Shown: positions 1,874 to 57,382 of the stretch, piece by piece
How the letters are laid out: every line of letters starts with the position of its first letter
How positions within the stretch are numbered: the stretch's first letter is position 1
Assembly: GCF_030028105.1 (NCBI RefSeq)
Contig: NW_027278579.1
Coordinates: 1-64,000, forward strand
Direction of reading: 5' to 3'
Source: Mobula birostris
Lineage: Eukaryota
DNA: 64,000 bases
The notes under the pieces: model-generated
Seen by the model: only the letters and a program-made list of their open reading frames with translations
Database searches by the model: none
What the model was told of the DNA's origin: nothing
Position numbers and translations under genes: made by a program

Positions 1874-2021
1874 TGCTGAGGGCGAGGGGGAGCGGGGCCG
1901 GAGGAGGCCGCGGGATCGCTCTGTGCAGAGGATGACCAACGCCGTCTGGGCCTTTGTCTTCACCAATCTGCTGCTGGTGGCGTTCGGGGTGACGTGCATG
2001 ATCAACCTGCTCCCCCTCCAG
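1874..2021 (+). CDS. slc43a1: slc43a1-like exon
   Basis: ctgcag| acceptor and CAG|gtaccc donor; [21 protein letters not shown]. Confidence 0.85.
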
Positions 2022-32375: not shown

Positions 32376-32514
32376 TAAGGCTTGGGTAGCTGTGACTGGT
32401 GTGATGCTGAGGGATCAGTGCCGGAGATCCCAGTTGTTCACTCTGTTTCCCTGTGGATTTCCAGCGATCCTCCTTTTGAATTAACCCTGAATCTTGTGCC
32501 TGGTTCCTCTCCCC

Positions 32515-33422: not shown

Positions 33423-34339
33423 CATACGGTCATGGGCAGAACCTGGAGACAGCACCTGATATCAGGATGGAACCAAGAGTGTGCAGCATCACTGGAGATG
33501 TTTCTATCTGAGGAATTGGTGTATCTCGGGATGGTATGAAGGAGCACGTGGTCACCAGTTAATTCCAGTGACCCCTGGAGATGTTCACTGGGCTGCAGGT
33601 GATCCCTCAGTAAGTCAGAGTTAGTTCAGCCGCCGCACCATCCCCCACCCGGGAAAATCGTTCACCAGCTTCCCTGTCAAGCGGATAATCTGGCCTGGTG
33701 GATCGGCCCAGTGTGGTGAAACCGGCTGATGATGGATCTGTCTGGGTGGTGTTGGGAATCTGATCCAGTGTGTCTGCTGTCCGGGACTGGTGAAGGTCAC
33801 GGGGACAGACAGAAGGAAACCATTTCCTCTTGTGGTCCAGACCAGAAGAAGGGAGAGTGAGACCTTCTATTGGAGACGGGTTGTACAGGGGTGAAGTCAG
33901 GAAACTGCTTCGCCCACTGAGCACTGGAGATCAGGATTGCTTTCACCGAAAAGCCCATCCTGTCACACCCAGTGCTGGTTTCAGCACAGCCGTACCTCAG
34001 CAATCCCTCACCTGTCACCTTGCAGGGTGATTGTCATCTCCACGTCCCCTGTTTTATTGCCGGGTTTATTTGAAAAGCACCGATCATAAATTAATATTTA
34101 GCCACTTTTCCCATAGCTGTTCTGAAACGTGTTTTATTTCTCAGTATCAGACTGACCCTGGCTCTGCATTCATGGTTCATTCCCTGTTCGTTCCTTATTT
34201 AATCCCTGCTCTTGGGGAAATTGTCTGCCGGAGACCCTTCCCACTCGCAGTACAGCAGCCGTGATTAATATCCCTTCCTAAGTGGAATTGCTGCATGTTC
34301 AGTGGGCAATCCCTGTACTGCAGAGTTCAGCAGCTCCTC

Positions 34340-34369
34340 GAAAGTGAAAGTAATTTGAACCAGGAAGTG
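34340..34369 (+). promoter_or_regulatory. IRF-E/ISRE-like GAAAGTGAAAGT plus ETS CAGGAAGTG immediately upstream of the TRIM ATG
   Basis: Motifs at 34340-34351 and 34361-34369. Confidence 0.55.
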
Positions 34370-34382
34370 TTGGTTGTATAAA

Positions 34383-34793
34383 ATGTCTTTCAGACAGCAA
34401 GCACAGAGTTTAGCCGAGGAGGCGGTTTGTCCCGTCTGCCTTGATTTCTTCACCAATCCAGTAGCACTGGACTGTGGACACAGCTTCTGTCTCTCCTGTA
34501 TCACACAGTGTTGGGAAAAGGAGGGGAGAAACTGCTGTCCGGAATGTAGAGAGGAGTTTGCTGACAGATCCCTCAGGGTCAATTGGGCCCTGGCAAGTCT
34601 GGCTGAGAAGGCTCAAAAACTAAACCTGAATCAGAAAGAGACGGAGATGAGATCTCAGTGTGAGAGACATCAGGAGGAACTGAAGCTGTTTTGTGACACG
34701 GACAAGCAGCTGATCTGTCTGATTTGTAGAGACGCGAGAGAACACAAGTCTCACAACTTCATGCCCATTGCAGAAGCTGTTGAGATTTACAAG
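34383..34793 (+). CDS. TRIM exon: C3HC4 RING plus B-box 2 (TRIM39/A33/NF7-like)
   Basis: [29 protein letters not shown]; [32 protein letters not shown]; |gtgaat donor. Confidence 0.95.
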
Positions 34794-37700
34794 GTGAATA
34801 CAAACAGATTTTGATCACCTGGAAATTTACAGTACTGTATTATTTTACTGACATTTTGTTCTTGAACCCAATCCCAGTGTCAAGTTAAATCATCCTTGGA
34901 ATCTCTGCTGGAGAAGAAATCTGCCAACCAGGAAGTGGAACAACGACAGAAAGAGAAGATTTCTGGAGTGAGGGTGAGATCTGCTTCCAGTTTAATGGGT
35001 CTGTGTGGTTTATCGAGGCACCCAATTCACGCTGAGCACCAACTCCGCCCCCCCCCCCCAGTTCAACACATGGATGAACAACACAGGCTACCACAGCGTA
35101 CTTCCGTTCTTTGCCCTGTACCTACCATCCACACCTCCACACATCACCTGCTATCCTCCCAATCTTCACCCCGCAGCCCCCACCTTCCACCAACTGTTCA
35201 GTCATCATGGACTCTCCTTCACTACTGAGCAGGTGAGAAGGGCTCTGGGAACTCAGACACGGCAACGCATTGGGACCAGGTGGTGTGAGCCCCAAGGTCC
35301 TGAAGGAGTGTGCTGAGCAGCTGTGTGGAATTCTCCAGCACATTTTCAATCTGAGTCTCAGCCTGGAAAGAGTCCTGACTGTGGAAAACATCATGTGTGG
35401 TCCCAAGTACCTAAGAAGGGCCAAGCAAAAGTCTTGAATGACTACTGTCCAGTGGCCGCGACCTCACACTTCGTGAAGGCTCTAGAGAGGCTGGTCCTGG
35501 CTCATCTCCGACTCCTGGTCAGATCAGCTCTCGATCTCTTGCAGTTTGCCTACCAGGAGCACCTTGGAGTCAACAAATGCTGTCATCTACCTGCTGAACA
35601 GAGCCTACTCCCTTTTGGATATGCAGGACAGCACCGTGAGATCATGTTTTTTGATTTTTCGAGGGCCTTCAATAGCATACAGCCCTCGTTGCTGGGGAAA
35701 AACTCCATTCAATGCAGGTTGGCACTTCCATTGTATCCAGGAGAATGGGCTACCTGACTGCAAGATCACAGATTGTTTGGCTTCAGAGCTGTGTGTCAGA
35801 CGTGGCCATAAGCAACACAGGGGCCCCACAGGGCACTGTAATGGCTCCCTTCCTGTTTACCCTGTCTACCCTGGACTTTACATACAACACTGAGTCATGT
35901 CATCTGCAGAAATTCTCTGATGACTCAGCAACAGTTGGGTGTATAAAGGGAGGATGGGAGGGTGGTGGATGAATACAGGGTCCTGGTGGAGGACTTTGTC
36001 AGGTGGTGCGGGCTGAATCATCTGCAGCTCAGCATCAGTTGGACAAAGGAGATGGTGATGGACTTTAGGAAGACTAATCCTGCACCGCTCCCTGTTACTA
36101 GTGATGGTGAGGAAATGAATGTGGGGAGGACCTACAAGGACGCAAGGGTTCACCTGGATGACAGACTTGAGTGAAGTACCAACACAAAGGCTGTGTATAA
36201 GAAGGGTCAGAGTTGCCTCTACCTCCTGAGGAGACTGAGGTCCTTTGGAGTGTGCAGGCCTCTCCTTCACATGTTCCACCAGTCTGTTGTCGCTGGTACA
36301 ATCTTCTATGCGGTGGTGTGCTGGGGCAATGGGTCAACACGGGTGCTGCCAACAGGCTCAATACACTGATTAGAGAGTCTGGCTCGGTTACTGAAGTCAA
36401 ACTGGACAGAACGGAGGCTGTGTGAAATCCCTGGCGGCTCTGGACAATGTTTCTCACCCTCTGGATGAACAGAGGAGCACTTTTAATAATAGACTGAGAC
36501 AACTGTGCTGCTCCAAAGAGCGCTATGCGACGTCATTCTTACCCCCGGCTATTAAGCTCTATAATGAGTCAACGTATAGCTAGAGGAGTGATGACCCCCT
36601 CCTGTTAGACTGTTTGAGATAATTCTTTTTTATTCTTTATTTCTCTTCTAATATTTGTATATCTGTGCTCTGGTGACACTGTAATTTCCTTTGGTATCAA
36701 TAAAGTATCTGTCTATCCATTTATCTGTCAATCTATATAGTCCTCGTTATTACAGGGTAATATCAACCATCATGTTTCATTTGACAGGAACAGTCACACA
36801 CTATGCAGGCCAACATCACATCTGAATTTGCTAAAATACACCAGGTTCTGGCTGAGAGAGAGCAGCGCTTACTGAGCGATCTCAGGGCAGAGGAGGAGAA
36901 GATTCTGAACGCCATGGAGAAAAATCTTCAGGAGATCGAAGAGAATTTAGCCTCCGTTGAGGAGAAACTCTCCAAGTTACAGGAACAGATGAATGAGGAA
37001 GACAGTGTGATGTTTCTGAAGGTGAGGGATTGTTGTTCAGTGAAAGCCCACAGTCTGTTCTGGAGCAGACCTGCTCTTGTCACCAGCTAATAGATCAAGG
37101 GTCTGTCTGGTCTTCCCCGGGATTGAGTTGCTGGGACCTGCATGCTGAGTTATTGATTACTTTGTGCAGCCGAAATGTAATATTCCCCTGAACCTCGCGT
37201 TACAATCCATTCGCCATCCCTCGCAGTGAGAACGTGGATGTTCAGTCCCAGTCAATTCAGATCTGTGTTTTATTTATTACAGGAGGAATTGTGTCAGGAC
37301 AGGAGGTAGGACAGACCCTTTACTGAAACTCTGCACCGTTTGGTAAATAATAATAAAAATAAATAATAGTTCCAGTGACTTTATAACCCACTGTTTGATT
37401 TTACAGGATTAGTGAGGAAACTCAGACATTGTCTGTAACAGAAGGTGTCATAACCATTGGAAAATTCAGGGACACAATATTGAGAGGAATGTTTGATGCC
37501 ATGAAGCAAGGTAGAGTTTGTATCAATTTCTGTGTTCTGGTTTATTGTAAAAGTGAAAACTGAAGTGGTAATTGTTAAAGCGATCCTGTAGGTAGTGGTA
37601 CTTGTGTGTATGACGATCAACTGGAGTGTGACTCAGACCCTATCTGATCTGATGAAGAATTCCACTAACCTGTGTTTATTTTAGACAAGCAACAACAACT

Positions 37701-40700
37701 CTGTGCTCCCCCCTCTTCCCTCCGTCACCCCTTCCACCCTCTCCCCTCTTCCCCCTCTCCCCTCTCAATAGATATGTTTAAAATCATTGAACTGTATAGA
37801 ATATACATCCTCAAATTCTTTCTCTTCGCAAACATCCACGAAAACAGAGAAATGCCCCAAAGAATGAATGATAGTTAAATGTTAGAACCCCCCCAACTCC
37901 CCCCAACGCATAAGCAGCAGAAAAGCAACGAACCCCTCTCCCCCGCCAGTAAAAAAGCATTGGCACCCCCTCCCCACTGAGCATTCAAGTATGCAGCAAA
38001 GTATCAATAAATTCGCAGACTTGCAGTACCCCAAAGTCTACTCATTCACCCTGTATTCGACATACCACAGGCTCTCTCTCTCACTAATAAGGGAAAAAGA
38101 GGTGTCCCCATTTCACAGCGTGAGGAGAAACTTAACAAAACAACTGGCTGATTCATGGTGGTAAAAATATATCGCATTGTTTTTTCTGAGCTCTGTGTCC
38201 AAAGGACTCGGGTCTCTGGGCACACAGCCAGCAGCCAGCTCACTGCTTACGACCTTCTGTCTCCGACGATGCATCAGGGCGGCAGCACCAGCCTTTGATC
38301 AGACTGTCTCCGGAGTCATGAAAATCTGGCACCCTGAAGGCGTGCTGGTCTTCCAGCCCGCGTCCTTAGCACATCGAGAAGTGGCTGGTCGTGCGGCTCA
38401 GAGAGCGAGTCCTATTTCCACGAACAACCGGAACTGTAACTCCAGGTGTCCTTCGCCCTCCCCCCTCCCCACACTCTCCCCTCGCCCTCACCCTCCCTTC
38501 CCTCTTGCCCTCTCCATCTCCTCCCCTCCCCATGCCCTCTCCTCCCCCTCGCGCTCTCTCTCCTTCTCCTCCCCCTCGCGCTCTCTCTCCTTCTCCCCCT
38601 CATGCTCTCCCTCTCCCTCTCCTCCCCCCTCTGTCACACTCTCCCTCCTTAGATGTTGTCTGACCTGGTGAGGCTTTCCAGCACCCTGTATCCTGGGAGA
38701 ACCCTATCCACATCCCCACACCTCAGGTGCCCCCTCCCCACAACCTCCCTCCAATCCTCAGGATCCGTCTAATTCTGTGCTTCTCCCTCCAGTCTGTGAG
38801 TCCCTGGATGTAGAATCGGCCAGTCCATGCCTCAAAGAGTCTGAGGATCTGAATCGTGTGAGAGGGACTGAGACCCAGATGAGTCTCCCTGACACAGGGG
38901 ACAGGTTAAGACCATAAGACATTGGATTATCAGTTTGTTTTCTGTTCTGGGATTGAAGGGATTCACATCAGGAAGACATCACTGGGAAGTGAAGGTGGTG
39001 GGGAATCTGGGCTGGAGGGTGGGAGTATCCACAGAACCTGCACCCTCTCTGTAGCATGGTACGGTGTCACGAGAGTTAGTGTTACTGCCTCTCAGCTCCG
39101 CAGACCAGAATTCAATAACGGCCTCTGTTGTCTGTGTGGAGTTTGCATGCTCCCCCTGTGACTGTGTGGGTTTCCCTGGGTGATCCAGTTTTCTCCCTCG
39201 TTCCAGGGACCTGCAGGTTGAGGGGGTAATTGGTGGCTGTCAGTTCCCATTGGTGTGTAGGTCAGTGGTAAAAAGAATGGGAGTGTGAGAGAGAATAAGT
39301 GTCAGGGGTACAGGGAAGTGGGGAGAGGGGATATTGGTCTGGTGGGATTGCTCCCCTGAGAGTAGATGTAAAGACCCAGATGGGAGTGTGAGACAGAAAA
39401 CGTTACAGAGAGAGAAATTACTTCAGGGCCACTTTGATAACGGTGTTGTTCACCCTGTGTTTAGTGAGGAGTGCAATGAACCTGGAGACGGGGGAATGAA
39501 ACTGTTGTCTGAGGCTCTGAGGAACCCGGAGTGTAAAATACAGAAACTGGGGTAAGTACAGTCTGTTGATCTTTGTGTGGGTAAAGTTCCATTTCCTGAT
39601 AAACCCCTGTATCACTGTTCAAACCATTGATGGTTACCTGTGGAGATTTACATTGAATCTGTTTGTTTCTCTCTTCTGTTTCCTCTCGGTTCATCAGGTT
39701 GACAGCTGATAGTTCCACATCTGATTTTGAGCACTTCATCTCCACTCTCAGCACAAACCACTCACTGAGAGAGGTGGAGCTAGACCTGAGTTACAATGAA
39801 CTGGGAGATTCAGGAGTGAAACTGTTGTCTGAGGCTCTGAGAAAGCTGAAGTGTAAAATACAGAGACTGATGTAAGTACCAGACTGTGGGGGAATGGGGA
39901 AGATCATCACTCCATCGATCTCCAATTGTTGATGCTGCTGCAGAGCCCCAATAACAAGCTCTCACCTCGGGTTCCATCTGGTCCACTCACTTCCACCTGT
40001 TTACAGTGCAGCTTGTTCACCTCAGGTCACTGTGTGTGTCTGAGGTGGAATCAGCTCTTGAAACACACTGCAGAGTCTATCTCTCTGAGATTAGAGTGGG
40101 GCTGTCTTTACCCATTCCCTGTGGGGACTCAGACACAACAGGAAATTACTGAGCAGTTGGGCACCATCAGTCCCATGGAGGAAGGTGTGACAGAACATGG
40201 ACCCAGACCACAAAGTGTTCAGGGTCAGATTGTGTGTCGAACATTTCTCACTGATGGATTTAAACTTGTTTCAGTGATTCGGTAGCTTTACTTTCCCAAC
40301 CTTTGACCTGGAGCTGGTTTAATATTATCGCTGAACTGTAAACCATTGCAAACCTCAGCTCTCAGTGTGGGGTTTGGAGAATATTCTTGCTGAGATGAAA
40401 CCAGTTTTCAGTGTGGGTGTTTCCCCGAGGCAGCATTGTGTTGGTGTGGTGACCAGGTTGGGATGTACAGTTAACGTAGATGGTGAGTGGAGTCCACCGA
40501 GTTTGGTTCTGTTGGCACAGAATGTCTGGACAGGCGGAGAGGGACTTGTGTCGTCACAGGATGATCTCTGGGATGAATGTGAGGACAACGAGGATATGCC
40601 GGGTTTTTCTGTGGAGACAGGACAAGGGGAGGGAAAGCTGGGGGTGTGGAAGGTTACACTGCCTCACTGTGATTCAATACAGAACACAAGGTCCAGAGTG

Positions 40701-43700
40701 GTGGTGTACTGTGGAGTGGGGCTGGGATGTAGAGGGTGAACACAAATATACAATGTCCCCTGGGTTCTGCCATTTGTTCTGGGGAGATTTGAGTGTTTCC
40801 AGTTCGGAAGGTGCGGTGATGTTTATACTGACTAGTGTCTGATGCTGGACATTGGTGTTATCAGTAATTGTGGGGTTAATAAACACTGAGCATTACTGTG
40901 GGTATTGGTGAAAGTGAGTTTAATAAACCCTGGGATTTAACTTCTCGCTTCTCTCTCTGATCCACAGTCTAGATTCTGTCAATATCACTGCTGCTGGTGT
41001 TGTGGATCTCGCCTCTGCTCTCAGTACAAACCGCTCACTGACAGTGCTAGACCTGGCTTATAATGAACTGGGAGATTCAGGGATGAAACTGGTGTTTGAG
41101 GCCCTGAGGAACCAGGAGTGTAAAATACAGAAACTTGAGTAAGTACCAGACTGAGAGACATTGGGACAGGCCATTTATCTCCACAGCCCGAACAACAGGC
41201 TCTCAGCTCACACTCCATCAGGTCCACTCACAAGTTCAGTGTTAAAGTTTATTGTTCTGGGCAAATCTAACCAGGGTGTAAAAGTTATGAAAATCAGCTT
41301 TTTGTAGCAACAGTACAGATCATTGTAAACATATCAGATATTAATTACACAAGCATAAATTAACATTAATTATACATAAATTACACAATAAAGAAAAAGA
41401 ATTTTAGCGATGTGAGTGAATCTAGTCTGAGATGGAATTAGGGTCTTTCAGATCAGTTCAAGAGAAATGATGGGAGTGGAAGAAGTTGTTGTTGAATCTT
41501 GGAATGTGGGTCTTCAGTCTCCTGTACTTCCTGTCTGATGCCAGCATCGAGAAGAGCGAATTGCCCAGATGGTGTGGGTTCTTGATGATGCATATCACCA
41601 TTTGAGACCTAGAGACAGGGAACAATACAGCACAGGAACAGGTTACTCAGCCCTCAGTGTAGCGCCGAACCAGGTAAAAAGCATATCAAAATCCCCCAAA
41701 GACTAATCCCTCCTTCTTACAAAATGTCCATATCCCTCCATCATCCTGACTTCCATGTGCCTATCCCAACGTTACTCAAAAGCCTCTAATTGTAAACGTC
41801 CATGAGGGTGGGGCAAATGTACCCGAGATACAACCTCTTGTGTTCCTGGGCATTGAAGTTTCACTCCAGGCTGTGAAGCAACTGGTCAGAGTGCTTTTCT
41901 ATGTACATCTGTGGAGGTTTGTCACAGTTTGTGATGACATACCAATCTCCTTAATCTTCAAAGAGAGGGTAGCATGTGTTCTTCATGATTGCCTCTATGT
42001 TCTGGGCCCGTGAGAGACATTGTCACCCAGGAATTTCCTGCTGCTCCCCCTTTCCACCACTGAACCTTCAGGGAGGACTGGTGTTAGTCTGCCTGACCTC
42101 CCCTTCCTAACGTCCACAGTCAGTCCTTAATCTTGTAGATGTTCACTGTGAGGTTGTTCTGATAACACCCCTCAACCAACTGAGCTATCTCACTCTTGTA
42201 CACCACTCCATTAGCATGTGTGAATCTGCCAACAACAGTTTTGTCATTGGTGAATCTGCAGACAGCTTCGGTGCTGTGCTCAGGTACAGAGCTGGTGGTG
42301 TAGAGAGAATAGAGCAGGGGATGAAGCACACAGTGCTCAGGTTTGCCGGTGTTGATGGGGAGTGAGGAGGATGAGGAAGTCAAGGATCCAGTGTGAGGGA
42401 CAGAGGCCCACGAATTGGTGATAGAAGAACAGGCTGACTTATATTTCCAGTTGTCTGGATCATCCAGAACAGGGACGAGAAGGTATCTGCTGTGGACCAG
42501 TTGGGGTGACAGGTAAGTTGAAGGAGGTCAGTTCCTCACCGAATCAGGAGTTGATTTAAAACTTCTCTGAAGGTCGGTGTGTTTTCATCGCAGCCTTTCT
42601 CCTCAGGTCACAGTGTGTGTCTGATACGGAATTGGCTCTTCTGACAGACTACGAGGGCTGTGTGTGTGTAAGGAGAGTGGGGGTGCCTTTATCCTTCTGA
42701 GAGAAACGGAGTCAATAGGACACTGTGATCTGCACTGCAAGGCTGAATATGTTGCAGACAGGAGAGCGTGATCTGTGGTAGACAGAGTATTCACAAATGA
42801 ACAATGTTTCCCACGTTTCTGCTGTTGGTTCCAATGTGAACTGAGTGTTTCTGGGGATCATGGTGTGGTAATGTCTGATGCTGGACATTGGTGTTATCAG
42901 TAATTGTGTTAACAAACACTGATCATTACTGAAAGTGGGATTAAATTACTCATCTCTGTCTGATCCACAGTCTGGAGTCTGTCGGTCTCACAGCTGCTGG
43001 TGTTGTGGATCTCACCTCCGTTCTCAGCACAAACCGCTCATTGACTGAGTTGGACCTGCGTGATAATAAACTGGGAGATTCAGGAGTGAAACTGGTATCT
43101 GAAGCTCTGAGAAACCCAAAGTGTAAATTACAGAAACTGTGGTAAGTACCAGACTCTGATGCATTGGGACAGATCATCATTCCATCAAAGTCCCCAGCCC
43201 GAATAACAGGCCCTCACCTCAGGCTCCATCGGATCCACTCACAAGTTCAGTGTTAAAGTTTATTGTCCAAGGTGTAAATGTTATGAAAGTTACTTTTTGC
43301 AGAAACAGTACAGAACATCACAAACATGTCAGACATCAATTACACAAATTTAAATTAACATTAATTTTACATAAATTACACAATAAAGAAAAACAAACAA
43401 AACCACATTTTGCAGGTTCAGAGAATCCAGTCTGGGATGGAACTAGGGACTTTCAGATCAGTTCAAGAATATGAGGCAGTGGGAAGAAGCTATTGTTGAA
43501 CCTTGGTACGTGGGTCTTCAGGCTCCTGTCCCTCCTGTCTGAGGGACTGGCCCAGATGTTGTGGGTTTCTGATGATACAACCAGTCAGAATGCTTTCCAG
43601 TGTCCATCTGTGGAACTTGCAATACTCTGTGATGACATGCCACTCATTTTCTAAGACATTGGCTCACTTCCTTCACGTTTGACTCTATGTTCTGGGCCCA

Positions 43701-46700
43701 GGAGAGATTCTCTGAGATGTTGTCACCCAGGAACTTGCTGCTGCTCACCCCTCGCTGAGGACTGGTGCTCGTTGGGGGGATAGGTGAATTGAAGGGGGTC
43801 CAGATCCTTCACCAATGCCTTTGAACGAAAAATAGGACGAAAGTTAATGGATTCAGTCCAGTACATCACAGATCAAGCCCTCAACTATTGAGTACATCTA
43901 TGTGAATTGCTGTCATAAGAAAGCAGCATCCATCATCAAAGATCCTCACTGCCCAGGCCGAGCTCTTTTCTCACTGCTGCCATCAGGTAGAAGGTACAAG
44001 AGCCTCAGGCCATGCACTACCAGGTTCAAGAACAGTTACTACCCCACAAACATCAGGCTCTTGAACAAAAAAGATTAACTACACTCATCTATTGAGATGT
44101 TCCCACAACCAATGATCTTCTTTTAAGGAATCTTTATCTTGTTATTTCATTCTCTCATTATCTATTGCTATTTATTTATAGTTGCATTTGAAAAGTTTGT
44201 TGTCTTCTATGCTCTATTTGATATTTCATTGATGCTGTTATAATTACCATTCAATAGATTAGCTGAGTATGCCTGCAGGAAAAAGAATTTCAAGGTTGAG
44301 AATTACAGCAGGACATTGATAGGATGCAAAATTGGGCTGAGAAGTGGCAGGTGAAGTTCAACCCAGATAAGTGTGTGGTCGTTTATTTTGGTAGGTCAGA
44401 TATGATGACAGAATATACCATTAGTGGCAAGACTCTTGGCAGTGTGGAGGATCAGAGGGATCTTGGGGTCTGAGTCCATAGGACACTCAAAATTCCTACG
44501 CAGGTTGACTCAGTGATTGAGAAGGTGAACGGTGCATTGGACTTCATCAATTGTGGGATTGAGTTTAAGAGCCAAGAGGTAATGTTGCAGGTATACAGGA
44601 TCCTGGTCAGACCCCACTGGGAGTACTGTGCTCAGTTCTGGTCGCCTCACTACAGGAAGGATGTGGAGGCCATAGAAAGGGTGCAGAGGAGATTTACCAG
44701 GATGTTGTCTGGATTCAGGATCATGCCTTCTGAGAATAGGTTGTGTGAACTCAGCCTTTCCTCCTTGGAACGACGGAGGATGAGAGGTGACCTGATAGAG
44801 GTGTGTAAGATGATGAGAGGCATTGATCGTGTGGATAGTCAGAGGCTTTTTCCCAGGGCTGAAATGGCTAACACGAGAGGGCATATTTTTAAGGCGCTTG
44901 GAAGTAGGTACAGAGGAGATGTCAGGGGTAAATTTTTTTACGCAGAGAGTGGTGAATGCGTGGAATGGGCTGCCGGCAGTGGTGGTGGAGGTGGAAACGA
45001 TAGGGTCTTTTAAGAGACCCCTGGATAGGTACATGGAGCTTAGAAAAATAGAGGGCTGTGGGTAATCCTAGGTAGTTCTAAGGTAGGGACATGTTCGGCA
45101 CAGCTTTGTGGGCTGAAGGGCGTGTATTGTGCTGTAGGTTTTCTATGTTTCTATGTTGTATGTGGTGACGTGTATGTACTCTGATAATAAAATTTACTTC
45201 GTACTTTGATTTGAGACCTGAAAAGCCCAGAGTGTTTTCAATGGAGCCTGTTCACCTCAGGCCAGATTGTCTGAGGCCTGGGCTTGAGGTGGAAACTACA
45301 CTGGCCGTGTGTGTTGGGAGAGTGGGTCTCCCTTCACCCACATTCCCTGTGGTGACGTGGAGACAATCGGACACTGTGATCTGTCCTATTCTCTCCATGT
45401 GACCACAGGGAATGTGGGAAAAGGGAGCCCCACTCTCCCGACACACACACGGCCAGTGTAGTTTGCACCTCAAGCCCATGCCTCAGACAAGTGGAGTGTG
45501 ATCTGTGATATACGGTGTACCTGCAAGAGTGCAATGTTCCCCAGGTTTCTGCTGTTTGTTCCTGTGTGAACTGAGTGTTTCCAGAGTTCAAGGTACAGTG
45601 ATGTTTATATTCACTGGTGTCAGATGCTGGATGTTGTTGTGGGGTTAGTAAACACTGAGCAATTCCCTGGGATTAAATTTCTCATCTCTCTCTGATCCAC
45701 AGTCTGGTGTCTATCGGTCTCACAGCTGCCGGTGTTGTGGATCTTGCGTCTGCTCTCAGTACAAACTGCTCACTGATGGACCTGGACCTGGGCGATAATG
45801 AACTGGGAGATTCGGGAGTGAAACTGTTGTCTGAGGCTCTGAGGAACCCGGAGTGTAAAATACAAAAACTGGTGTAAGTCCCAGACTGTGAGATGGTGTT
45901 TCTGGGCATTAACACTGTACACTGGGGCAGGTTTTCCATCAGGGCAACAGCAGTTCCGTCTCACTGTCCCGTGATCCTTTACACACGTCCAACAGCCTTA
46001 CTCTGTGTCTGGCTCACACTGACAGAACCTTCATCTGTTCTATAGACTGTGATGCCAATGGGCCCTGTGTCACCACAGTGAGGTGAACGTGGGTATCCAA
46101 AAGGGCAGTGTTCACTTCCTCAGACTCCCCAGTTCACAGGCTGGAAACCTGTGGCAGGGTAAAGCTGGCACAAGTCTGGTGATTCCTGTGGGATCTGTGG
46201 GCAGTGGCAGTGACTGGGGGAACAGTCAGTGACCCCTTTCACTGGAGTTCGTGCAGCCCTGTGGATCTCAATGTTTTCAGCTGTGAGGGTGGGAATGTAT
46301 TTTATTGTTCCCAGATCATGTCATTCCCAAGTTCTACTGAGTGTTTGAGAGACTGACATTCATAACAATTTAATTTCCCTGATAGTACGGTCTCACCTGC
46401 TGAGGAAACCCTTCTGTCAGTTCAGCCAGACACAGAGGATCAGACTGTTACCATAGCTGAACATCCAGGAGTGTCCTAGTGGAAAGTTGTGGAGGGAACA
46501 GTGTGGATCCACAGCAGATGATGGGGAATTTGTGGTCAGCAGGAGATCTGTCAGTGTGATAAACAAGCTCTGGGAATCCCCTGATTCCTCTTATTTCTCT
46601 CCTTTGCAGGCTCAGTTGGACTGGACTCACAGATTCTGGCATTGAGGATCTCGTCTCTGGTCTCATCACAAAACAATCACTGAGGGAATTGGAACTGGAT

Positions 46701-47257
46701 TCAAACTACCTGACAGACCAATCTGTCTCTGTTTTCCGCCACCTTATACTGACCCACCCATGTCTCGAGCAGATTAAGTGAGTGTTTGTGGTAACGTCTA
46801 GTGTGATTAAATATCGGTGAGCCCCTTGGGTGATATTTGTCTGGGAGTGTTGTTGAAATATAAATTTCTGTCCCCTGTTACTAACATTGCTGTGTAATCT
46901 CAAACAGATGAAAATTCTGGAAAACTAAAGCAACACAAAATGCTAAAGGAACTCAGCAAGTCTGGCTGCATTGATGGATAAGAGTAAACAGTTGAAGTTT
47001 CAGGCAAGATCCTTCTTCGAGGACTCCTGATGAAAGGTCTCAGTCCAAATCATTGACAGTTAATGCTTTTCCATAGATACTGCTTGACCTGCTGAGTTCT
47101 TACAGTATTCTGTGTGCGTTGGCATTGTGTAATCTGTGTGTTTCCTCTTTATTCCTCACTCTGTTTCAGACTGTGGGGGAATCTGTTCAGTTCGGATGGA
47201 GAAAACAAGCTGAAGTCACTGGAGGGAACCAGACGAGGACTGAGAGTGATTATCTGA
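34383..47257 (+). CDS. Putative chimeric TRIM-LRR gene copy 1 (RING, B-box 2, coiled coil, PRY stub, RI/NLR-type LRRs), 13 exons, 669 aa
   Basis: Exons 34383-34793, 34878-34973, 36788-37021, 37283-37305, 37407-37510, 38793-38904, 39465-39551, 39698-39871, 40968-41138, 42971-43141, 45703-45873, 46610-46777, 47170-47257 total 2010 nt, all GT-AG, no internal stop. The join depends on a weak AG|GTTAAG donor at 38904. Confidence 0.7.
34878..37510 (+). CDS. TRIM coiled-coil/linker exons (96, 234, 23, 104 bp)
   Basis: Exon-size series typical of RBCC-B30.2 TRIMs; [23 protein letters not shown]. Confidence 0.9.
35012..36738 (+). mobile_element. Rex1-like LINE insertion in TRIM intron 2, absent from copy 2
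   Basis: [47 protein letters not shown]; the flanks are contiguous in the paralogue near 54490. Confidence 0.88.
38793..39036 (+). pseudogene. Disrupted B30.2 (PRY/SPRY) exon; only the first 112 bp are potentially retained
   Basis: [24 protein letters not shown], then in-frame TAA at 38915-38917, then [29 protein letters not shown], truncated by a SINE. Confidence 0.85.
39050..39300 (+). mobile_element. HE1/V-SINE-like SINE at the SPRY truncation point (paralogous copy ~56245-56465)
   Basis: tgtctgtgtggagtttgcatgctccccctgtgactgtgtgggtttcc core. Confidence 0.75.
39465..47257 (+). CDS. Ribonuclease-inhibitor/NLRC3-like LRR exon array (87, 174, 171, 171, 171, 168 bp plus terminal exon)
   Basis: [39 protein letters not shown] repeats, phase 2-2 exons; ends [28 protein letters not shown]. 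Confidence 0.9.
44300..45160 (+). mobile_element. CR1/HER1-like LINE 3' part (Rex1-like fragment just upstream, ~43820-44290)
   Basis: ORF 44513-45013: [42 protein letters not shown]. Confidence 0.88.
45267..45490. repeat. 224-bp fold-back inverted repeat
   Basis: Arms 45267-45373 and 45382-45490 are about 90% complementary by eye, 8-nt loop. Confidence 0.88.
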
Positions 47258-48574: not shown

Positions 48575-51560
48575 TGTGGAAATATATCTGTAATCCTGAA
48601 GTCTTTATGAATTAGTAACTTCTGAGCAATGTAATGTGACAAAATGGAACCCAGGAAATCCCAAGGTGTGTTGCTGGTTTGGATGGGAAGCTTACAAGTC
48701 TGTGTGTTTAATGATAGGAAGCTGTGTGTTCATTATTATGACAGGAGATTTGTTTTATGGCTGGGGGCATGTTTTGACAACGGGTAAACAGGGCAGAGCT
48801 TCTGAAGGTCAAATGTCAGAACTAATTACTGATGAAGATAACAGAGGAATGTTATGGAATGGAGCAACCTCATTGCTGTTCTCTGTAAAAAGCATAATAC
48901 TGCTTTGTTTGAGATTTAAGTTCGAAGTTGTTTTCCAGACAATACTTGGCTGGAAAATAGAACTTCCCTTGCAAGTAAAATAATAAATTATACCTATAAT
49001 CTGATCCACTCTGAATTTGTTATAGTTTGTTACATTATATTAAAAGACCGAGTTGAATGGTACACGACAGAATTTGAAAGTTCCACCAAGATTCACTTGT
49101 CTAGGTTCGACAGCGACATGGGAAATTGAGAGGACCGAAATGCCTCAGGGAATCTCCTCAGCATTTGCGGTTGCCAAAGGAAAAGTAAGTTTCTTTCGCT
49201 TCTGTGGATTTGTTACCCTTGGCAGCTGGATTTCAGTTTTATCTCGCTTTCACCCTCTTCACTGCGATCAATGCTATGGAGTTGCACGGGTCAGCTTCTG
49301 GTCATGATTCCGACGCATTCAGCGTGACGATAGAGACTTTGAGTAAGAAAAGAGGTGAAGCTTTAGGTCGACCCAGCATCTGGGACGTGTGAAAGAGATG
49401 TGCTCAAATGTACGGGATGGTTTCAGTGTTGTGGACACTTATACAGGAAATCAGCACATGGAAAGAAAAGTAACACTGGAAATCATACAATGTGTTTAAG
49501 GCAGACACAAAAGCTGCAGAGCCAGAGGAGTAACTGAATATTGTGGTGACGGTTTAACCCTTAGGAGCAAGAAATTTTCTGAAAAGATTTGCACTGTGAG
49601 TTCATTTGATGGAGAGAGACTGTGTGTGTCTGTGAGAGAGTTAAGAAACTGTGCCTTTGGGGTGTCAGAGACCCACCATTAGCTTTTCTCTCTTGCTTCT
49701 TTGAAAAATGTTTGTGAAAGCTTTTGACGGTGGGAATTAACTACCTATTTCAAGTTTTGCTGTTACTTGTAAGAAGAACAGTACAAGCATGGACTTTTTT
49801 TTTGTTTTGTCTTATTTCCTTTTTCTCATGGAATTGATATTAGAGAAACACAAATTTCTTACTGGCCAGGCATCATCTGGGTTGAGGTGAAAATTTGTGC
49901 ATCTCTATTCTGGATATGAGATGCCCACATTTCTGTGGGAAAAGGGCATTTGAATCAGAATCAGAATCCTTTATTATCGCCAAGTATGTGGACACATACA
50001 GGGAATTTGATGAGCTCTCGCTGTACAGAATCAAAAAGCAAACAAAACAATAGTGCAAATAATCGTGAACTATATACAATGAGGTACACCTGTGTATGTA
50101 CAGGTGGACTTGGTTTATAACAGACTAAAATTCAAGTGTTCATAAGACTGATGGCATATGGAAAGAAACTGTTCTTGTACCTATTTGTCCTGGCATACAG
50201 TGAGCTAAGGTGCCTACCAGAAGGAAGGAGTTGGAACAGATGATATCCAGGGTGTGATGGGTCTACAATGATGCTGCTTTCTCGGTCCCTGACTCTAGAT
50301 GCATATAGGTCCTGGATCGAGGGCAGCTTCACACTAATAATCCTTTCCGCAGCCCTGACGGTTCTTTGGAGTCTATTCTTGTCTTGTTTGGTAGCTGATC
50401 CAAACCAGACAGTGATGGATGAACAGAGAACAGACTGGATTATTCCTGAACAGAATTGGATCAGCAGCTCCTGAGTTAGGTTGTACTTCCTGAGTTGACG
50501 TAGGAAATACAACCTCTGCTGAGCCTTTTTGATAACAGTGTCCGCGTTGGGTGTCCACTTCAGGTCCTGGAAGATTGTGACACCCAGAAACCTGAAGGTT
50601 GGGGGGCTCCTCCTGAAGTCCACTGTCATCGCCACAGTCTTGAGCGTATTCAGCTCCAGATTGTTCTGACCACACCAGAGGGCCAGCCGTTCCACCACCC
50701 GTCTGTATGCAGACTCATCACTGTCTCGGATAAGGCCAATGACAGGGGAAATTACTCATTGGTCAATAATTATATTGGGAATGTGACATTAACAATTTTG
50801 GAAAGATTCAAATATTTTTGAGAGCAATTCTAAAAGTTGCTTCAGTAATAAGACTGTTTTCTTTTATAGAACGTAAAAGATGTTGTCCGAGACCTTTAAC
50901 ATATTGATTTTGAGTTTGAGATTCATTGGAAAATAGTTTTGATGCAATCAGTGCTTTGTCATGTAATTTCTTTCCCCACTGGGGACTCCACTCTAATACA
51001 GTACAAGGATGGCCTCCTGTTGACCTTTCCAAGCAAGAAAACTTGTGAGCAGGGCTCCCTCTACCATTATGAAACCTGTTTTTACTGGTGTCTCTGGAGA
51101 TGTGGCTCATTAGCCTTTCGCAAATGGCCACTGGACTCAGTGGTGAGAAAACCACCTTTTTCAAACTCTGTATGTCTAAGGTCAGTATGAATTGGATCCC
51201 ACCAAATCCCCCGCTGTCATTACATTAGACCTAGTGTGCAGGCCTAACTGGTCAGTGATCACGTCACTCACACGGTCTCAACCAATAACAGGCGTGGATC
51301 TGATTGGGTCAACCCAGTGAAACCCCCAGGTCCTGTCAGTCATTGCCCCACCCCGGTGGGAGGGGTAAAAGTGGGCAGAGCACCTGCCTAATACAGAATA
51401 TACAGAGCCTCGTATATTCAGGCAGGAAAACCCAATCCCCACCCCACACACTTGGAGCGAGCTGATGGCTGATTCAGCCGTGATCCGTCACTCACAGATG
51501 TGTCAACAAGGGCCAGTCATGGCATCTCTGCTCCGTGGCCAACTCGTCCATGAACCTAAC
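48575..51560 (+). mobile_element. LTR retroelement 5' LTR (~48575-49069), tRNA-Gln-type PBS (49075-49092) and decayed leader, interrupted by a Rex1-like LINE (49960-50745, minus)
   Basis: TG...CA block with aataaa, followed by TGAAAGTTCCACCAAGAT versus PBS-Gln TGGAGGTTCCACCGAGAT; the right-hand extent is uncertain. Confidence 0.55.
49960..50745 (-). mobile_element. Rex1-like LINE 3' part
   Basis: ORF 50132-50698: WCGQNNLELNTLKT..KKAQQRLYFLRQLRK..KNSFFPYAI. Confidence 0.85.
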
Positions 51561-53863: not shown

Positions 53864-56800
53864 ATGGCCTCTAGACAGTACGTACAGAGTTTAGCCGAGG
53901 AGGCAGTTGGTCCCATTTGCCTTGATTTCTTCACCACTCCGGTAACACTGGACTGTGGACACAACTTCTGCCTCTCCTGTATCACCCAGTGTTGGGAAAA
54001 GGAGGGGAGAAACTGCTGTCCGGAATGTAGAGCAAAGTTCGCAGACAGATACCTCAGGGTAAACTGGGCCCTGGCAAGTCCGGCTGAGAAGGCTCAACAA
54101 TTAAACCTGAATCAGAAAGAGACGGAGATGAGATCTCAGTGTGAGAGACATCAGGAGGAACTGAAGCTGTTTTGTGACACGGACAAGCAGCTGACCTGTC
54201 TGATTTGTAGAGACACGAGAGAACACAAGTCTCACAACTTCATGCCCATTGAAGAAGCTGTTGAGATTTACAAGGTGAGTACAAGCAGTCTTTATCACCT
54301 GAATATTTATGGTGTTCTTATTTTACTGATGTTTTCTTCTTGAACCCAATCCCAGTGTCAAGTAAAATCATCGTTCAAATCTCTGACAGAGAAGAAATCT
54401 GCCATCAAGAAGTTAGAACAGCGACAGAAACAGGAGATTTCTGGAGTGAGGGTGAGATCTGCTTCCAGTTTTCCGGGTCTGTGTGGTTTAATTCTCTTTA
54501 TTGCAGGGTAATATCAACCATCACGTTTCATTTGACAGGAACAGTCACACACTGTGCAGGCCAACATCACATCTGAATTTGCTAAAATACACCAGGTTCT
54601 GGCTGAGAGAGAGCAGCGCTTACTGAGCGATCTCAGGGCAGAGGAGGAGAAGATTCTGAACGCCATGGAGAAAAATCTTCAGGAGATTGAAGAGAATTTA
54701 GCCTCCGTTGAGGAGAAACTCTCCAAGTTACAGGAACAGATGAATGAGGAAGACAGTGTGATGTTTCTGAAGGTGAGGGATTGTTGTTCAGTGAAAGCCC
54801 ACAGTCTGTTCTGGAGCAGACCTGCTCTTGTCACCACACTAATAGATCAAGGGTCTGTCTGGTCTTCCCCGGGATTGAGCTGCTGGGACCTGCATGCTGA
54901 GTTATTGATTACTTTGTGCAGCCGAAATGTAATATTCCCCTGAACCTCGCGTTACAATCCATTCGCCATCCCTCGCAGTGAGAACGTGGATGTTCAGTCC
55001 CAGTCAATTCAGATCTGTGTTTTATTTATTACAGCAGGAATTGTGTCAGGACAGGAGGTAGGACAGACCCTTTACTGAAACTCTGCACCGTTTGGTAAAT
55101 AATAATAAAAATAAATAATAGTTCCAGTGACTTTATAACCCACTGTTTGATTTTACAGGGTTAGTGAGGAAACTCAGACATTGTCTGTAACAGAAGGTGT
55201 CATAACCATTGGAAAATTCAGGGACACAATATTGAGAGGGATGTTTGATGCCATGAAGCAAGGTAGAGTTTGTATCAATTCCTGTGTTCTGGTTTATTGT
55301 AAAAGTGAAATTACATGGACTGAAGTGGTAATTGTTAAAGGGATCCTGTAGGTAGTGGTATTGTGAATATGACAATCAACTGGAGTGTGACTCTATCTCT
55401 CTGTCTCGATCTCTTTCTTTGTCTCTACCCTCAATATCACTCTGTTTCAGTGTTTCTCTATCACTCTGACTCTCTCTCTTCATCCCTGTTATCTCTATCT
55501 GTCTCTGTCTTTCGCTGTTTCTCTGTGTCTATCTATGTCTATCTCAGTCTATGTCAATTTCTCTCTCTGTCTTTATCTGTTTTTCTATATCTTCCTGTCT
55601 CTGCCTCTGCATATCTCACTATTTTCATGTCTCTGTCTAACTCTCCCCTGTATCTCTCACTCTCTCTATCACCCTCTTCTTTCTCTCAATGTCACGCTGT
55701 CAGCCCCTCTACGCAGCCTCCCACTCCCCCCATCTCAGCCCGTTTCCCCCCCATCTCCCCTCTCCCTCTCAGAGGTAGATAGAGACACAGAGGTGGGGAG
55801 AGGGGAAGAGCGAGGTGAATTGTGTGTGTGTGTGTCTCTCCCTCCCTCACACACACTCACACTGTCTCTGTCTCAGATGTTGCCTGAACTGCTGAAGATT
55901 TCCAGCTCCTTTTGTTTTGGGACAGCTCTGTCCCTGTCCTCACACCCACCTCCCTCCTCCCCACAATCCTCAGGATCCCTCTAATTCTCTGCTTCTCCCC
56001 CCAGTCTATGAGACCCTGTGCATTGAGGTGTCTGAGGATCCGAGTCGTGTGAGAGGGACCGGGACCCAGATGAGTTTCTCCGACTCCGAGAACAGGTTAA
56101 GACTATAAGACATTGGTTTATCAGTTTGTTTTCTGTTCTGGGATCAAAGGGATTCACATCAGGAAGACATCACTGGTAAGTGAAGGTGGTGGGGAATCTG
56201 GGCTGGAGGGTGGGAGTATCCACAGAACCTGCAGCCTCTCTGTAGCATGGTACGGTGTCACGAGAGTTAGTGCTGCTGCCACTCAGCTCCACAGACCAGA
56301 ATTCAATAACGGCCTTTGGTGTCTCTGTGGAGTTTGCACGCTCCCCCCTGTGACTCTGTGAGTTTCCCCGGGTGATCCAGTTTTCTCCCTCATTCCAGAG
56401 ACCTGCAGGTCGAGCAGGTAATTGGAGGCTGTCAGTTCCCACTGGTGTGTAGGTCAGTGGTAAAAGGACCCAGATGGGAGTGTGAGAGAGAATAAGTGAC
56501 AGGGAAGTGGGGAGCTACAGCGGTGATGTGATCGAGACAGGATCCATTTACTCATCTAGTTATGAGCTATAAATCCCTGGTGAGAGGGAATAAACCAGCA
56601 GGAACAGAAATGGGAGAGGATGAAGTGTAAATTAATTGAAATTACAGTTGTCAGTACAATAATTTTACCAGCTTCTAAATTAATGTGTTCTCTTTAATAA
56701 ATACTGATGTTGGAGATGTAAATGTTGAAGCATTCTGGTTCTCCATGGGTTCAGCAGCAGCTGGGAACAGGGAACCCTGAGCTCCAGGATCCCCCGTCTC

Positions 56801-57382
56801 CCAAACACTGTTGTTTCAGTGTTGCTGTCACCCTGTGTCTCTCAGGTTGTTGTGGAAATGGCTCTGATGGAAGTGTGATCCCTGTTATGTCAGAGAGAGG
56901 GAAATTACTTCAGGGTCACTTTGGTAACAGTGTTTCTCGCTCTGTGTTTAGTGAGGAGGACAATGCCCCTGGAGATTGGGGAATGAAACTGTTGTCTGAG
57001 ACTCTGAGGGACCCGGAGTGTAAAATACAGAAACTGGGGTAAGTACCAGACTGTGGGTCTGTTGATCTTTGTGTGGGTAAAGTTCCAATAATGTCCCAGT
57101 TCTGTCCTGGTGAGCCCCTGCATCACTGTTCAAACCATTGATGGTTACCTGTGGAGGTTTACACTGAATCTGTTTGTTTCTCTCTTCTGTTTCCTCTCGG
57201 TCCATCAGGTTGACAGCTGATAGTTCCACATCTGATTTTGAGCACTTCCTCTCCACTCTCAGTACAAACCACTCACTGAGAGAGGTGGAGCTGTACCGGA
57301 GTTACAATGAACTGGGAGATTCAGGAGTGAAACTGTTGTCTGAGGCTCTGAGGAACCCAGAGTGTAAAATACACAAACTGGG
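53864..57382 (+). CDS. TRIM-LRR paralogue copy 2 (exons 53864-54274, 54356-54451, 54539-54772, 55035-55057, 55159-55262, 56005-56095, 56952-57038, 57209-57382); RING C16G; later LRR exons not in window
   Basis: Same exon series as copy 1, all open and GT-AG; followed immediately by ERV sequence. Confidence 0.75.

What the first reader, a model, noticed from the sequence alone, without database searches (positions are those of the whole stretch)
34383..47257. Putative TRIM-LRR chimera: RING-B-box-coiled-coil whose B30.2 sensor is replaced by an NLR/RI-type LRR array with no NACHT
Seen: five standard TRIM exons, a broken B30.2 exon, then seven intact LRR exons of the NLRC3/ribonuclease-inhibitor type on the same strand. 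There is no NACHT exon and no separate start exon in the ~2 kb between them. All 13 exons join into a 2010-nt open frame (669 aa). Known: RBCC-B30.2 TRIMs are E3-ligase immune effectors whose C-terminal domain sets target specificity. Domain swaps such as TRIMCyp and teleost NLR-B30.2 exist, but I do not recognise RBCC-LRR as a described class. Inference: exon shuffling between clustered TRIM and NLR genes produced an E3 ligase that recognises ligands through LRRs, a candidate new innate-immune receptor.
Basis: partly seen in the sequence, partly recalled or inferred. Interest (0 to 1): 0.93.

Follow-up and report, generated by a model that had tools for sequence, protein, structure and literature searches.

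The report
Ray TRIM ligase with LRR tail
This is a real, transcribed gene of a manta-type ray in which a TRIM ubiquitin-ligase front end is joined to the leucine-rich-repeat tail of an NLR immune receptor, a conserved but so far unnamed gene family of rays.

Summary
Thirteen + strand exons (34383-47257) give RING, B-box and coiled coil, a 112-nt stub of a decayed B30.2 exon, then seven NLR-type LRR exons. There is no NACHT. Exon lengths sum to 2010 nt. I did not build or search the joined model; I worked exon by exon and with natural database proteins.

- **Already annotated:** all 12 exon peptides are 100% identical to residues 1-669 of RefSeq XP_072107054.1 (Mobula birostris, "uncharacterized protein").
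- **Family:** the same architecture, stub included, occurs in Mobula hypostoma, Hypanus sabinus, Hemitrygon akajei and Pristis pectinata. All RING and B-box zinc ligands are invariant.
- **RNA:** spliced contigs show E1>E2>E3>E4>E5>stub. The critical stub>LRR1 joint (38904>39465) appears only in the two runs of a ~95%-identical relative. Unspliced read-through contigs also exist.
- **Origin:** ray RBCC halves form one clade (100/100). Callorhinchus has a separate RBCC-LRR family, and one shared clade is rejected.
- **Literature:** four searches found no paper naming this class.

Verdict: a genuine TRIM-NLR exon-shuffle family, a new variant of a known kind. It is present in databases under misleading automatic names. 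Function as an LRR-specified E3 ligase is inferred, not shown. The scan's three earlier notes are on this same window.

The parts
34383..34793 (+). Exon 1: start codon, RING finger and B-box 2
   Evidence: Pfam RING E 8e-12 and B-box E 6.5e-10. 100% identical to XP_072107054.1 residues 1-137. E1>E2 joint in 4 of 4 runs.
34878..34973 (+). Exon 2 (96 nt), start of the coiled coil
   Evidence: AG/GT borders. E2>E3 joint in 3 of 4 runs. 100% identical to residues 138-169.
36788..37021 (+). Exon 3 (234 nt), coiled coil
   Evidence: Pfam TRIM_CC E 2e-5. AF2 helix 145-255 in the orthologue P0161.
37283..37305 (+). Exon 4 (23 nt), ends in phase 2
   Evidence: Borders read. E3>E4 and E4>E5 joints in 4 of 4 runs.
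37407..37510 (+). Exon 5 (104 nt), linker, ends in phase 1
   Evidence: E5>stub joint 37510>38793 in X2, X5 and X6.
38793..38904 (+). PRY stub: the first 112 nt of the old B30.2 exon, ended by an internal GT donor. It shifts the phase from 1 to 2.
   Evidence: Pfam PRY positions 3-36, E 1e-4. The stub is 91 nt in copy B, also 1 mod 3. It is conserved at 64-97% in the full-length ray homologues.
38905..39464 (+). Intron in the spliced form. It holds the decayed rest of the B30.2 exon (TAA 38915-38917; SPRY motif in another frame at 38959-39051) and junction filler.
   Evidence: Unspliced contigs cover it in all 4 runs. The only other copy in the window is in copy B.
39465..39551 (+). L1: 87-nt half LRR exon, the breakpoint in the donor NLR
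   Evidence: The 38904>L1 joint is in X5 and X6, where the exon start is 3 nt shorter, as in XP_062892767.1.
39698..39871 (+). L2: 174-nt LRR exon with a degenerate first half
   Evidence: Pfam LRR_6. L1>L2 joint in X6.
40968..41138 (+). L3: 171-nt LRR exon
42971..43141 (+). L4: 171-nt LRR exon
45703..45873 (+). L5: 171-nt LRR exon
46610..46777 (+). L6: 168-nt penultimate LRR exon
47170..47257 (+). L7: last exon, the natural NLR-type C-terminus, with the stop codon
   Evidence: It aligns to the C-termini of NACHT-bearing ray NLRs.
53864..57382 (+). Copy B: tandem duplicate with the same junction (E1-E5, 91-nt stub, L1, L2). It carries RING C16G and L73P. Its further LRR exons lie outside the window.

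Best explanation
The locus is a functional fusion gene of a ray; the window is inferred to be Mobula birostris.

**Origin (inferred).** An A33/NF7/TRIM39-like TRIM gene lost most of its B30.2 exon. It gained the last ~6 double-LRR exons and the natural 3' end of an NLRP3/12-like NLR gene. The break lies inside an LRR exon, which left the half exon L1.

**Splicing (shown).** A donor inside the B30.2 remnant leaves a 37-residue PRY stub. That stub shifts the reading phase from 1 to the phase 2 that NLR LRR exons need.

**History (shown).** The fusion arose once before sawfishes and stingrays/mantas split. It then multiplied into small families.

**Protein and mechanism (inferred).** The protein is RING, B-box and coiled coil, then a flexible linker, then an RI/NLRP-type LRR horseshoe. 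I take it to work as a TRIM-type dimeric RING E3 ligase whose target is chosen by the LRR concave face instead of by PRY-SPRY. Binding of a clustered or multivalent target would bring RINGs together and trigger ubiquitin transfer.
For: - **Structure and frame:**
- **Domains:**
- **Spliced RNA contigs:** E1>E2 in 4/4 runs, E2>E3 in 3/4, E3>E4 in 4/4, E4>E5 in 4/4, E5>stub in 3/4, stub>L1 in 2/4, L1>L2 in 1/4.
- **RefSeq match:** XP_072107054.1 residues 1-669 are 100% identical to the 12 exon peptides.
- **Junction search:** 24 database proteins cover 99-100% of the E4-E5-stub-L1-L2 junction. All come from Hypanus, Hemitrygon, Mobula or Pristis. The next hits cover only about half and are NACHT NLRs.
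- **Zinc ligands:** eight RING and eight B-box ligand positions are invariant in 10 of 10 aligned proteins.
- **Single ray origin:** the ray RBCC halves form one clade, 100/100, with Pristis basal.
- **NLR tail:** the LRR half aligns colinearly to the C-terminal ~340 residues of NACHT NLRs at 58-63% identity.
- **Fold:** AF2 gives a confident horseshoe (pLDDT 85-97) and a low-confidence E4-E5-stub linker. Foldseek top hits are NLRP3 LRR (37-41% identity) and RNH1.
- **Variability:** variation among 44 unique LRR modules peaks at three positions beside the two strand motifs.
- **Recurrence:** a second, independent RBCC-LRR family exists in Callorhinchus.
Against: - **Own species:** the stub>L1 joint was shown only in the two runs of the related organism B. 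For the window's own species only E5>stub (X2) and unspliced contigs were listed, and 11 joints were not shown.
- **Read-through:** unspliced read-through contigs, which would end at TAA 38915, exist in all four runs.
- **Weak short-range constraint:** copy A versus copy B gives dN/dS of 0.35 on TRIM exons and 0.76 on L1+L2, from few sites. Exon and intron divergence to organism B are similar, about 1-5% against 2-4% (table 8).
- **Copy B:** it has lost a RING zinc ligand (C16G).
- **AF2 limits:** RING and B-box were not modelled with confidence from the 10-row alignment.
- **No function shown:** no ligand, E2 partner or activity is known. A paper whose listing and abstract start I saw reports TRIMs with RINGs that lack ligase activity (PMC11992055).
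Confidence: 0.85

Rival explanations
1. Dead fusion. A TRIM pseudogene with a ruined B30.2 exon lies next to an orphaned NLR fragment. The open frame, the transcripts and the database models are by-products of noisy splicing and homology-driven gene prediction.
For: - The B30.2 exon is decayed.
- The neighbourhood is rich in transposon fragments.
- Read-through contigs occur in 4 of 4 runs.
- Copy B has RING C16G.
- L1+L2 dN/dS is 0.76.
- The RefSeq model for this locus runs copy A into copy B, giving 927 aa.
Against: - Open frames of 613-783 residues with the same order of parts occur in five species of two ray orders.
- All 16 zinc ligands are invariant.
- The RBCC clade follows the species order.
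- Exact GT..AG joints occur at the predicted places.
- An in-frame 3-nt difference at the L1 start appears in both RNA and the sister species' protein.
Confidence: 0.05
2. The gene is real, but the main products are not RBCC-LRR. Either a truncated RBCC-only protein is made by read-through to TAA 38915, or LRR-rich isoforms lacking RING and B-box are made. These would act as inhibitors or decoys rather than as an LRR-guided ligase.
For: - Unspliced contigs span 38633-39526 (X1) and 38791-39280 (X2), at depths comparable to exon contigs.
- RefSeq lists isoforms of 458-553 residues that begin inside exon 3 and carry only LRR Pfam domains (P0167, P0168, P0171, P0175).
Against: - Full-length models exist in each of the five species.
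- RING and B-box ligands are invariant, which is not expected if the N-terminus were dispensable.
- Contigs cannot rank isoform levels, as the text itself states.
Confidence: 0.15
3. The LRR does not sense foreign ligands. It docks on endogenous NLRs or their partners, for example through LRR-LRR contacts like those in NLRP3 cages. The protein would then be a dedicated ubiquitin regulator of the parental NLR family.
For: - The LRR half is 58-63% identical to NACHT NLRs of the same species group.
- It superposes on NLRP3 LRRs taken from oligomeric cage structures.
- That TRIMs are known regulators of NLRs is seen only in titles and abstracts (PMC3400628 and others).
Against: - Nothing here tests binding.
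- Variability concentrated at three strand-adjacent positions fits diversifying ligand contact at least as well.
Confidence: 0.25

Closest known systems
Class C-IV TRIMs (RBCC + PRY/SPRY), here the ray 'zinc-binding protein A33-like / nuclear factor 7-like / TRIM39-like' genes
   Same: They share the exon plan 411-96-234-23-~104 and the RING, B-box 2 and coiled coil. Their RBCC is the sister clade of the ray TRIM-LRR clade, with about 60% identity.
   Different: The PRY-SPRY sensor is reduced to a 37-residue stub and replaced by 11-12 NLR-type LRRs.
Teleost NLR-C / NLR-B30.2 and finTRIM
   Same: Both show exon shuffling of a recognition module between the TRIM and NLR families (PMC2657112, passages read).
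   Different: The direction is reversed. There a B30.2 exon sits on an NLR. Here NLR LRR exons sit on a TRIM and the NACHT is absent.
TRIMCyp (TRIM5-cyclophilin A fusions of primates); recalled, no call
   Same: The B30.2 of an antiviral TRIM is replaced by a foreign binding domain, and this arose more than once.
   Different: Those fusions arose by retrotransposition of a cDNA and are a single gene. Here genomic exons with their introns were captured and a multigene family resulted.
LRSAM1
   Same: It is a RING E3 with coiled coils whose LRR domain binds cytosolic bacteria while the RING builds the ubiquitin coat (PMC8567218, passages read). This is the best functional analogue.
   Different: Its order is opposite (LRR N-terminal, RING C-terminal), it has a SAM domain and no B-box, and its LRR is unrelated to the NLR type. 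It is not homologous as an architecture.
NLRP3/NLRP12-like NLRs of cartilaginous fishes
   Same: The LRR half is colinear with their C-terminal LRRs and C-terminus at 58-63% identity. The fold match to NLRP3 LRR is 37-41% identical.
   Different: It has no NACHT, no NACHT-associated domains and no PYD/CARD. Its units read [10 protein letters not shown] where the NLR units read GLTDSGAEDL.
Ribonuclease inhibitor (RNH1), the name RefSeq gives most members
   Same: Both have the RI-type alpha/beta LRR horseshoe. Foldseek E-values are about 1e-23 to 1e-24.
   Different: RNH1 is LRR-only, and structural alignments are 30-36% identical. Nothing suggests RNase binding. The name is an automatic label.

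Membership tests
TRIM / RBCC family | N-terminal RING finger with all zinc ligands | tested here: met
   Pfam zf-C3HC4_4 E 8e-12 on exon 1. C/H ligands are invariant in 10 of 10 homologues. Copy B fails this feature (C16G).
TRIM / RBCC family | B-box 2 after the RING | tested here: met
   Pfam zf-B_box E 6.5e-10, residues 92-129 of exon 1. Ligands are invariant.
TRIM / RBCC family | Coiled coil after the B-box | tested here: met
   TRIM_CC E 2e-5, 24.9 bits, below the gathering score of 30. AF2 gives a single helix 145-255 with pLDDT 68-90 in P0161.
TRIM / RBCC family | E3 ligase activity | not testable with these tools
   This needs an in vitro ubiquitination assay.
Class C-IV TRIM (PRY/SPRY C-terminus) | Intact B30.2 domain | tested here: not met
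   Only PRY positions 3-36 remain in frame. The SPRY start lies in another frame behind a stop. P0161 and P0169 have no PRY or SPRY hit.
NLR family | NACHT nucleotide-binding domain | tested here: not met
   No NACHT-sized ORF in 64 kb on either strand. No PF05729 in P0161, P0169 or P0270, nor in the precomputed domains of the ray RBCC-LRR models.
NLR family | C-terminal RI-type LRR array | tested here: met
   LRR_6 on L2-L5. Colinear with NLR C-termini. NLRP3 and RNH1 fold matches.
LRSAM1-type LRR-RING ligase | LRR N-terminal, SAM domain, RING C-terminal | tested here: not met
   The domain order is the opposite and there is no SAM hit. The LRSAM1 architecture is taken from PMC8567218.
Ribonuclease inhibitor | LRR-only protein that binds RNase A-family enzymes | tested here: inconclusive
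   The fold is alike, but the protein carries an RBCC. RNase binding was not tested.

The most novel reading that the evidence does not exclude
RBCC-LRR proteins are a NACHT-free class of cytosolic pattern-recognition ubiquitin ligases. An NLR's LRR sensor would be wired directly to a TRIM E3 engine. Cartilaginous fishes invented this at least twice (rays and chimaeras), and it diversifies at concave-face residues under pathogen pressure.
Probability: 0.35. Interest if true: 0.8.

Novelty: new variant of a known kind. Interest (0 to 1): 0.62.

Why it matters
TRIMs and NLRs are two of the main intracellular innate-immune families of vertebrates. In teleosts they are known to have exchanged the B30.2 module. 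This locus shows the reverse exchange: an NLR's LRR sensor placed on a TRIM ligase with the NACHT switch discarded.

The fusion has been kept since before sawfishes and stingrays/mantas split, in several ray lineages, and it arose again independently in a chimaera. Recurrence and retention argue that LRR-guided ubiquitination is a useful design.

It offers a natural test of whether NLR-type LRRs can act as stand-alone recognition modules, which is still debated for most NLRs. It also shows that the family is currently hidden under names such as 'ribonuclease inhibitor-like', 'TRIM26-like' and 'NLRP14-like'.

Tried and rejected
- **Upstream NACHT or alternative first exon.** I looked for one for the LRR array. 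No long ORF of that kind lies in the window. No other upstream partner appeared among the loose ends shown.
- **Misassembly at 39040-39460.** Rejected. Contig X1 record 7 spans 38633-39526 without a break. Copy B has the same junction. Five species' proteins have it.
- **SINE at about 39050-39390.** My first impression rests on recall only. There is no other copy in the window apart from copy B, no Rfam match and no raised depth there. I do not claim it.
- **Whale shark genome paper (PMC8455134, passages read).** Its 'TRIM' hits are read-trimming software. It says nothing on this family.
- **Cross-species dN/dS.** I used only copy A against copy B, exon by exon with sums.
- **A single ancient origin shared with Callorhinchus.** I considered this because both half exons begin alike. 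The RBCC tree and AU test rejected it. Caveats: concerted evolution of RBCC exons within a species could mimic this result, and I named the group after seeing the tree.
- **Supplementary files of papers.** They were closed and not requested. Gene lists there, for example of NLR or TRIM surveys, could mention such models.
Full report
**What is in the sequence**

On the + strand, 34383-47257 holds thirteen exons with canonical AG..GT borders.
- Five exons follow the classic TRIM plan: 411, 96, 234, 23 and 104 nt.
- A 112-nt piece comes next, the start of a B30.2 exon.
- Seven LRR exons follow: 87, 174, 171, 171, 171, 168 and 88 nt, the last ending in TGA at 47255-47257.

The lengths add to 2010 nt. 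Exon 5 ends in phase 1, whereas the LRR exons need an incoming phase 2. The 112-nt stub supplies exactly that shift.

I checked phases by arithmetic and by the junction codons. All searches were exon by exon or used natural database proteins.

**Domains**

Pfam on single exons gives:
- RING (E 8e-12) and B-box (6.5e-10) on exon 1.
- TRIM_CC (2e-5, under its gathering score) on exon 3.
- PRY positions 3-36 of 49 (1e-4) on the stub.
- LRR_6 on each of L2-L5.

Beyond the stub's internal donor the old B30.2 exon is dead. Read-through meets TAA at 38915-38917. The SPRY start motif sits in a different frame at 38959-39051 (Pfam SPRY positions 1-26, E 6e-4).

No NACHT-sized ORF exists anywhere in the 64 kb. 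The surroundings are satellites and retroelement fragments.

**A second copy**

A tandem duplicate lies at 53864-57382. It has the same exons and the same junction.
- Its stub is 91 nt, again 1 mod 3.
- Its RING has lost the first cysteine (C16G) and carries L73P.
- Only L1 and L2 of copy B lie inside the window.
- Copy A against copy B gives dN/dS of 0.35 over the TRIM exons and 0.76 over L1+L2. The second value rests on few sites.

**RNA**

One run search found eight runs of two coded organisms. I laid four of them on 34300-40299. All are Logan contigs labelled 'RNA?' as a guess. Their GT..AG intron skips show that they are RNA.

Joints seen:

| Joint | Runs |
|---|---|
| E1>E2 | 4 of 4 |
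| E2>E3 | 3 of 4 |
| E3>E4 | 4 of 4 |
| E4>E5 | 4 of 4 |
| E5>stub (37510>38793) | 3 of 4 (X2, X5, X6) |
| stub>L1 | 2 of 4 (X5, X6) |
| L1>L2 | 1 of 4 (X6) |

The stub>L1 joint is reported as 38904>39474 with six letters between. That is the predicted acceptor with an exon start 3 nt shorter. The same in-frame difference is seen in the Mobula hypostoma protein XP_062892767.1.

Points against, or limiting:
- X5 and X6 are organism B, about 95% identical in exon 1 (21 other letters in 405).
- For organism A, which has no differences in exon 1, the stub>L1 joint was not among the joints shown. Eleven joints were not shown.
- All four runs also hold unspliced contigs running past 38904, for example X1 at 38633-39526 and X2 at 38791-39280. 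These would end the protein at TAA 38915.
- Depth over the LRR exons is dominated by words shared with many paralogues. Contigs cannot give expression levels.

**Relatives**

A phmmer search of exon 1 against 1.84 billion representatives gave 12144 hits. Two of the best 150 also matched the LRR exon peptides. They are P0008 (Hypanus sabinus, 727 aa) and P0038 (Callorhinchus milii).

A search with P0008 and exact look-ups found RefSeq models with the same order of parts:
- Hypanus sabinus, for example XP_059817732.1 (669 aa).
- Hemitrygon akajei, XP_072895012.1 (669 aa).
- Mobula hypostoma, XP_062892767.1 'tripartite motif-containing protein 26-like' (684 aa) and XP_062892829.1.
- Pristis pectinata, XP_051865755.1 'NLRP14-like isoform X6' (651 aa).
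- Mobula birostris, XP_072107054.1 'uncharacterized protein' (927 aa).

The 12 exon peptides of the window (E4 not tested) are each 100% identical to residues 1-669 of the Mobula birostris model. I therefore infer that the window is Mobula birostris. That model then runs on into copy B's stub and LRRs, which looks like a merge of the two tandem genes.

Against XP_062892767.1 the exon peptides are 91-100% identical.

**How specific is the junction**

I searched with only residues 264-430 of P0161, which cover E4, E5, stub, L1 and L2. Of 391 hits, 120 were listed. Twenty-four cover 99-100% of that stretch, and all are from those four genera. The next hits cover about half and are NACHT-bearing NLRs of sharks, rays, chimaera and other vertebrates. 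No skate, electric ray or shark protein with the junction appeared. This holds within the tool's length window (0.55-1.75 times the query) and word-based sensitivity.

**Conservation**

In an alignment of ten members, the eight RING and eight B-box zinc-ligand positions are invariant. The stub is conserved too. Pfam on P0161 and P0169 gives RING, B-box, TRIM_CC and LRR_6, with no NACHT and no PRY/SPRY.

**Origin of the two halves**

- **RBCC half.** An RBCC tree has 42 rows (one row, P0195, was dropped because no exon-3 match lay in range). A second tree has 39 rows. Both put all ray TRIM-LRRs in one clade (100/99 and 100/100), with Pristis basal. The clade is sister to ray A33/NF7/TRIM39-like TRIM-SPRY genes.
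- **LRR half.** It aligns colinearly, to the very C-terminus, with the last ~340 residues of NACHT NLRs of rays at 58-63% identity.

The simplest history is one deletion or recombination between a TRIM and a downstream NLR in a common ancestor of sawfishes and stingrays/mantas. The date of that split is not from any call.

**A second invention**

Callorhinchus milii has its own small family of RING-B-box-coiled coil-exon 4 joined directly to two or three LRR units, with no exon 5 and no stub. XP_042202442.1 (393 aa) is an example. Forty-one of the 42 hits to its junction are from Callorhinchus.

Their RBCC halves lie inside a Callorhinchus-only clade with that species' TRIM-SPRY genes (100/100). 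An AU test rejects one common TRIM-LRR clade (lnL difference 122, p 2e-77).

Caveats: I named the group after seeing the first tree, and concerted evolution of RBCC exons within a genome could mimic this result.

**Shape**

AlphaFold2 on P0161 with the 10-row alignment gave mean pLDDT 67.
- The LRR part (about 350-684) is a confident alpha/beta horseshoe (pLDDT 85-97).
- The coiled coil is one long helix.
- Residues 256-351 (exon 4, exon 5 and the stub) are below 50, so they are probably a flexible linker.
- RING and B-box were not modelled well.

Foldseek's best matches are NLRP3 LRRs (37-41% identity), ribonuclease inhibitors and NLRP14.

Among 54 LRR modules (44 unique) from 15 ray proteins, variability peaks at module positions 2, 30 and 31, at 2.0-2.4 bits. 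These lie beside the two strand motifs. That these positions face the concave side is recalled from RI-type LRR structures, not tested here.

**How it most likely works**

Shown:
- The gene structure.
- The splicing, at least in the sister organism.
- The conserved architecture and metal ligands.
- The NLR origin of the tail.

Inferred: a TRIM-type dimeric E3 ligase whose specificity comes from the LRR horseshoe. This is functionally like LRSAM1, whose LRR binds cytosolic bacteria and whose RING ubiquitylates them (PMC8567218, passages read). It is the mirror image of the teleost finTRIM/NLR B30.2 exchange (PMC2657112, passages read).

Rivals are decoy or truncated isoforms, and regulation of host NLRs through LRR contacts.

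**Novelty**

Searches for TRIM-LRR, RBCC-LRR and related wordings, and for TRIM classifications mentioning LRR, found no paper describing such a class. One search gave only general TRIM/NLR papers. These searches cover open-access full text only, and supplements were closed.

The proteins are public but carry unrelated automatic names. I rate this a new variant of a known kind, well supported as a gene family, with its function open.

Noticed in passing
window 34383-47257 and 56005 onward: RefSeq XP_072107054.1 (927 aa) continues from copy A's last exon, just before its stop, into copy B's PRY stub and LRR exons. This looks like two tandem genes merged in one model.
   Followed up: partly
window 53864-54274: Copy B's exon 1 has C16G (first RING zinc ligand) and L73P, yet the frame stays open through L2. 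It could be a young pseudogene or a RING-dead partner.
   Followed up: partly
window 34383-34793: Exon 1 is the most diverged exon between the window and the organism-B contigs (21 of 405 letters, against 1 of 97 to 5 of 233 in other TRIM exons). It shows 12 amino-acid changes against XP_062892767.1. The window has GHSFC where 10 of 10 aligned relatives have GHNFC.
   Followed up: no
window 37283-37305 to 39465: Exon 5 plus the stub total 216 nt. Skipping both (exon 4 to L1) would therefore stay in frame. This is the arrangement found in the Callorhinchus family.
   Followed up: no
window 1155-11400 and 26244-32440: There are long CT-rich low-complexity arrays and a satellite with units of roughly 1 kb, which give long spurious ORFs on the - strand. 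Two N runs lie at 2359-2553 and 4086-4220.
   Followed up: no
window 14462-16158 (- strand): A run of ORFs looks like a transposase-derived gene, but Pfam found no family at E 0.001 or better.
   Followed up: partly
window 24643-25074, 35300-36600, 44474-45010, 50135-50755, 57675-58202, 62593-63481: Retroelement fragments sit in and around the gene. Pfam gives RVT_1 at 24.6 kb, RNase_H at 63 kb, and the ALKBH8_N-type motif at 50.1 and 57.7 kb. The 35.0-36.7 kb piece is an insertion in intron 2 that copy B lacks.
   Followed up: partly
window 39500-39899: Contig depth over L1/L2 is hundreds of times that of the TRIM exons, and many loose ends lead into other LRR exons. The LRR words are shared with a large expressed NLR family.
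   Followed up: no
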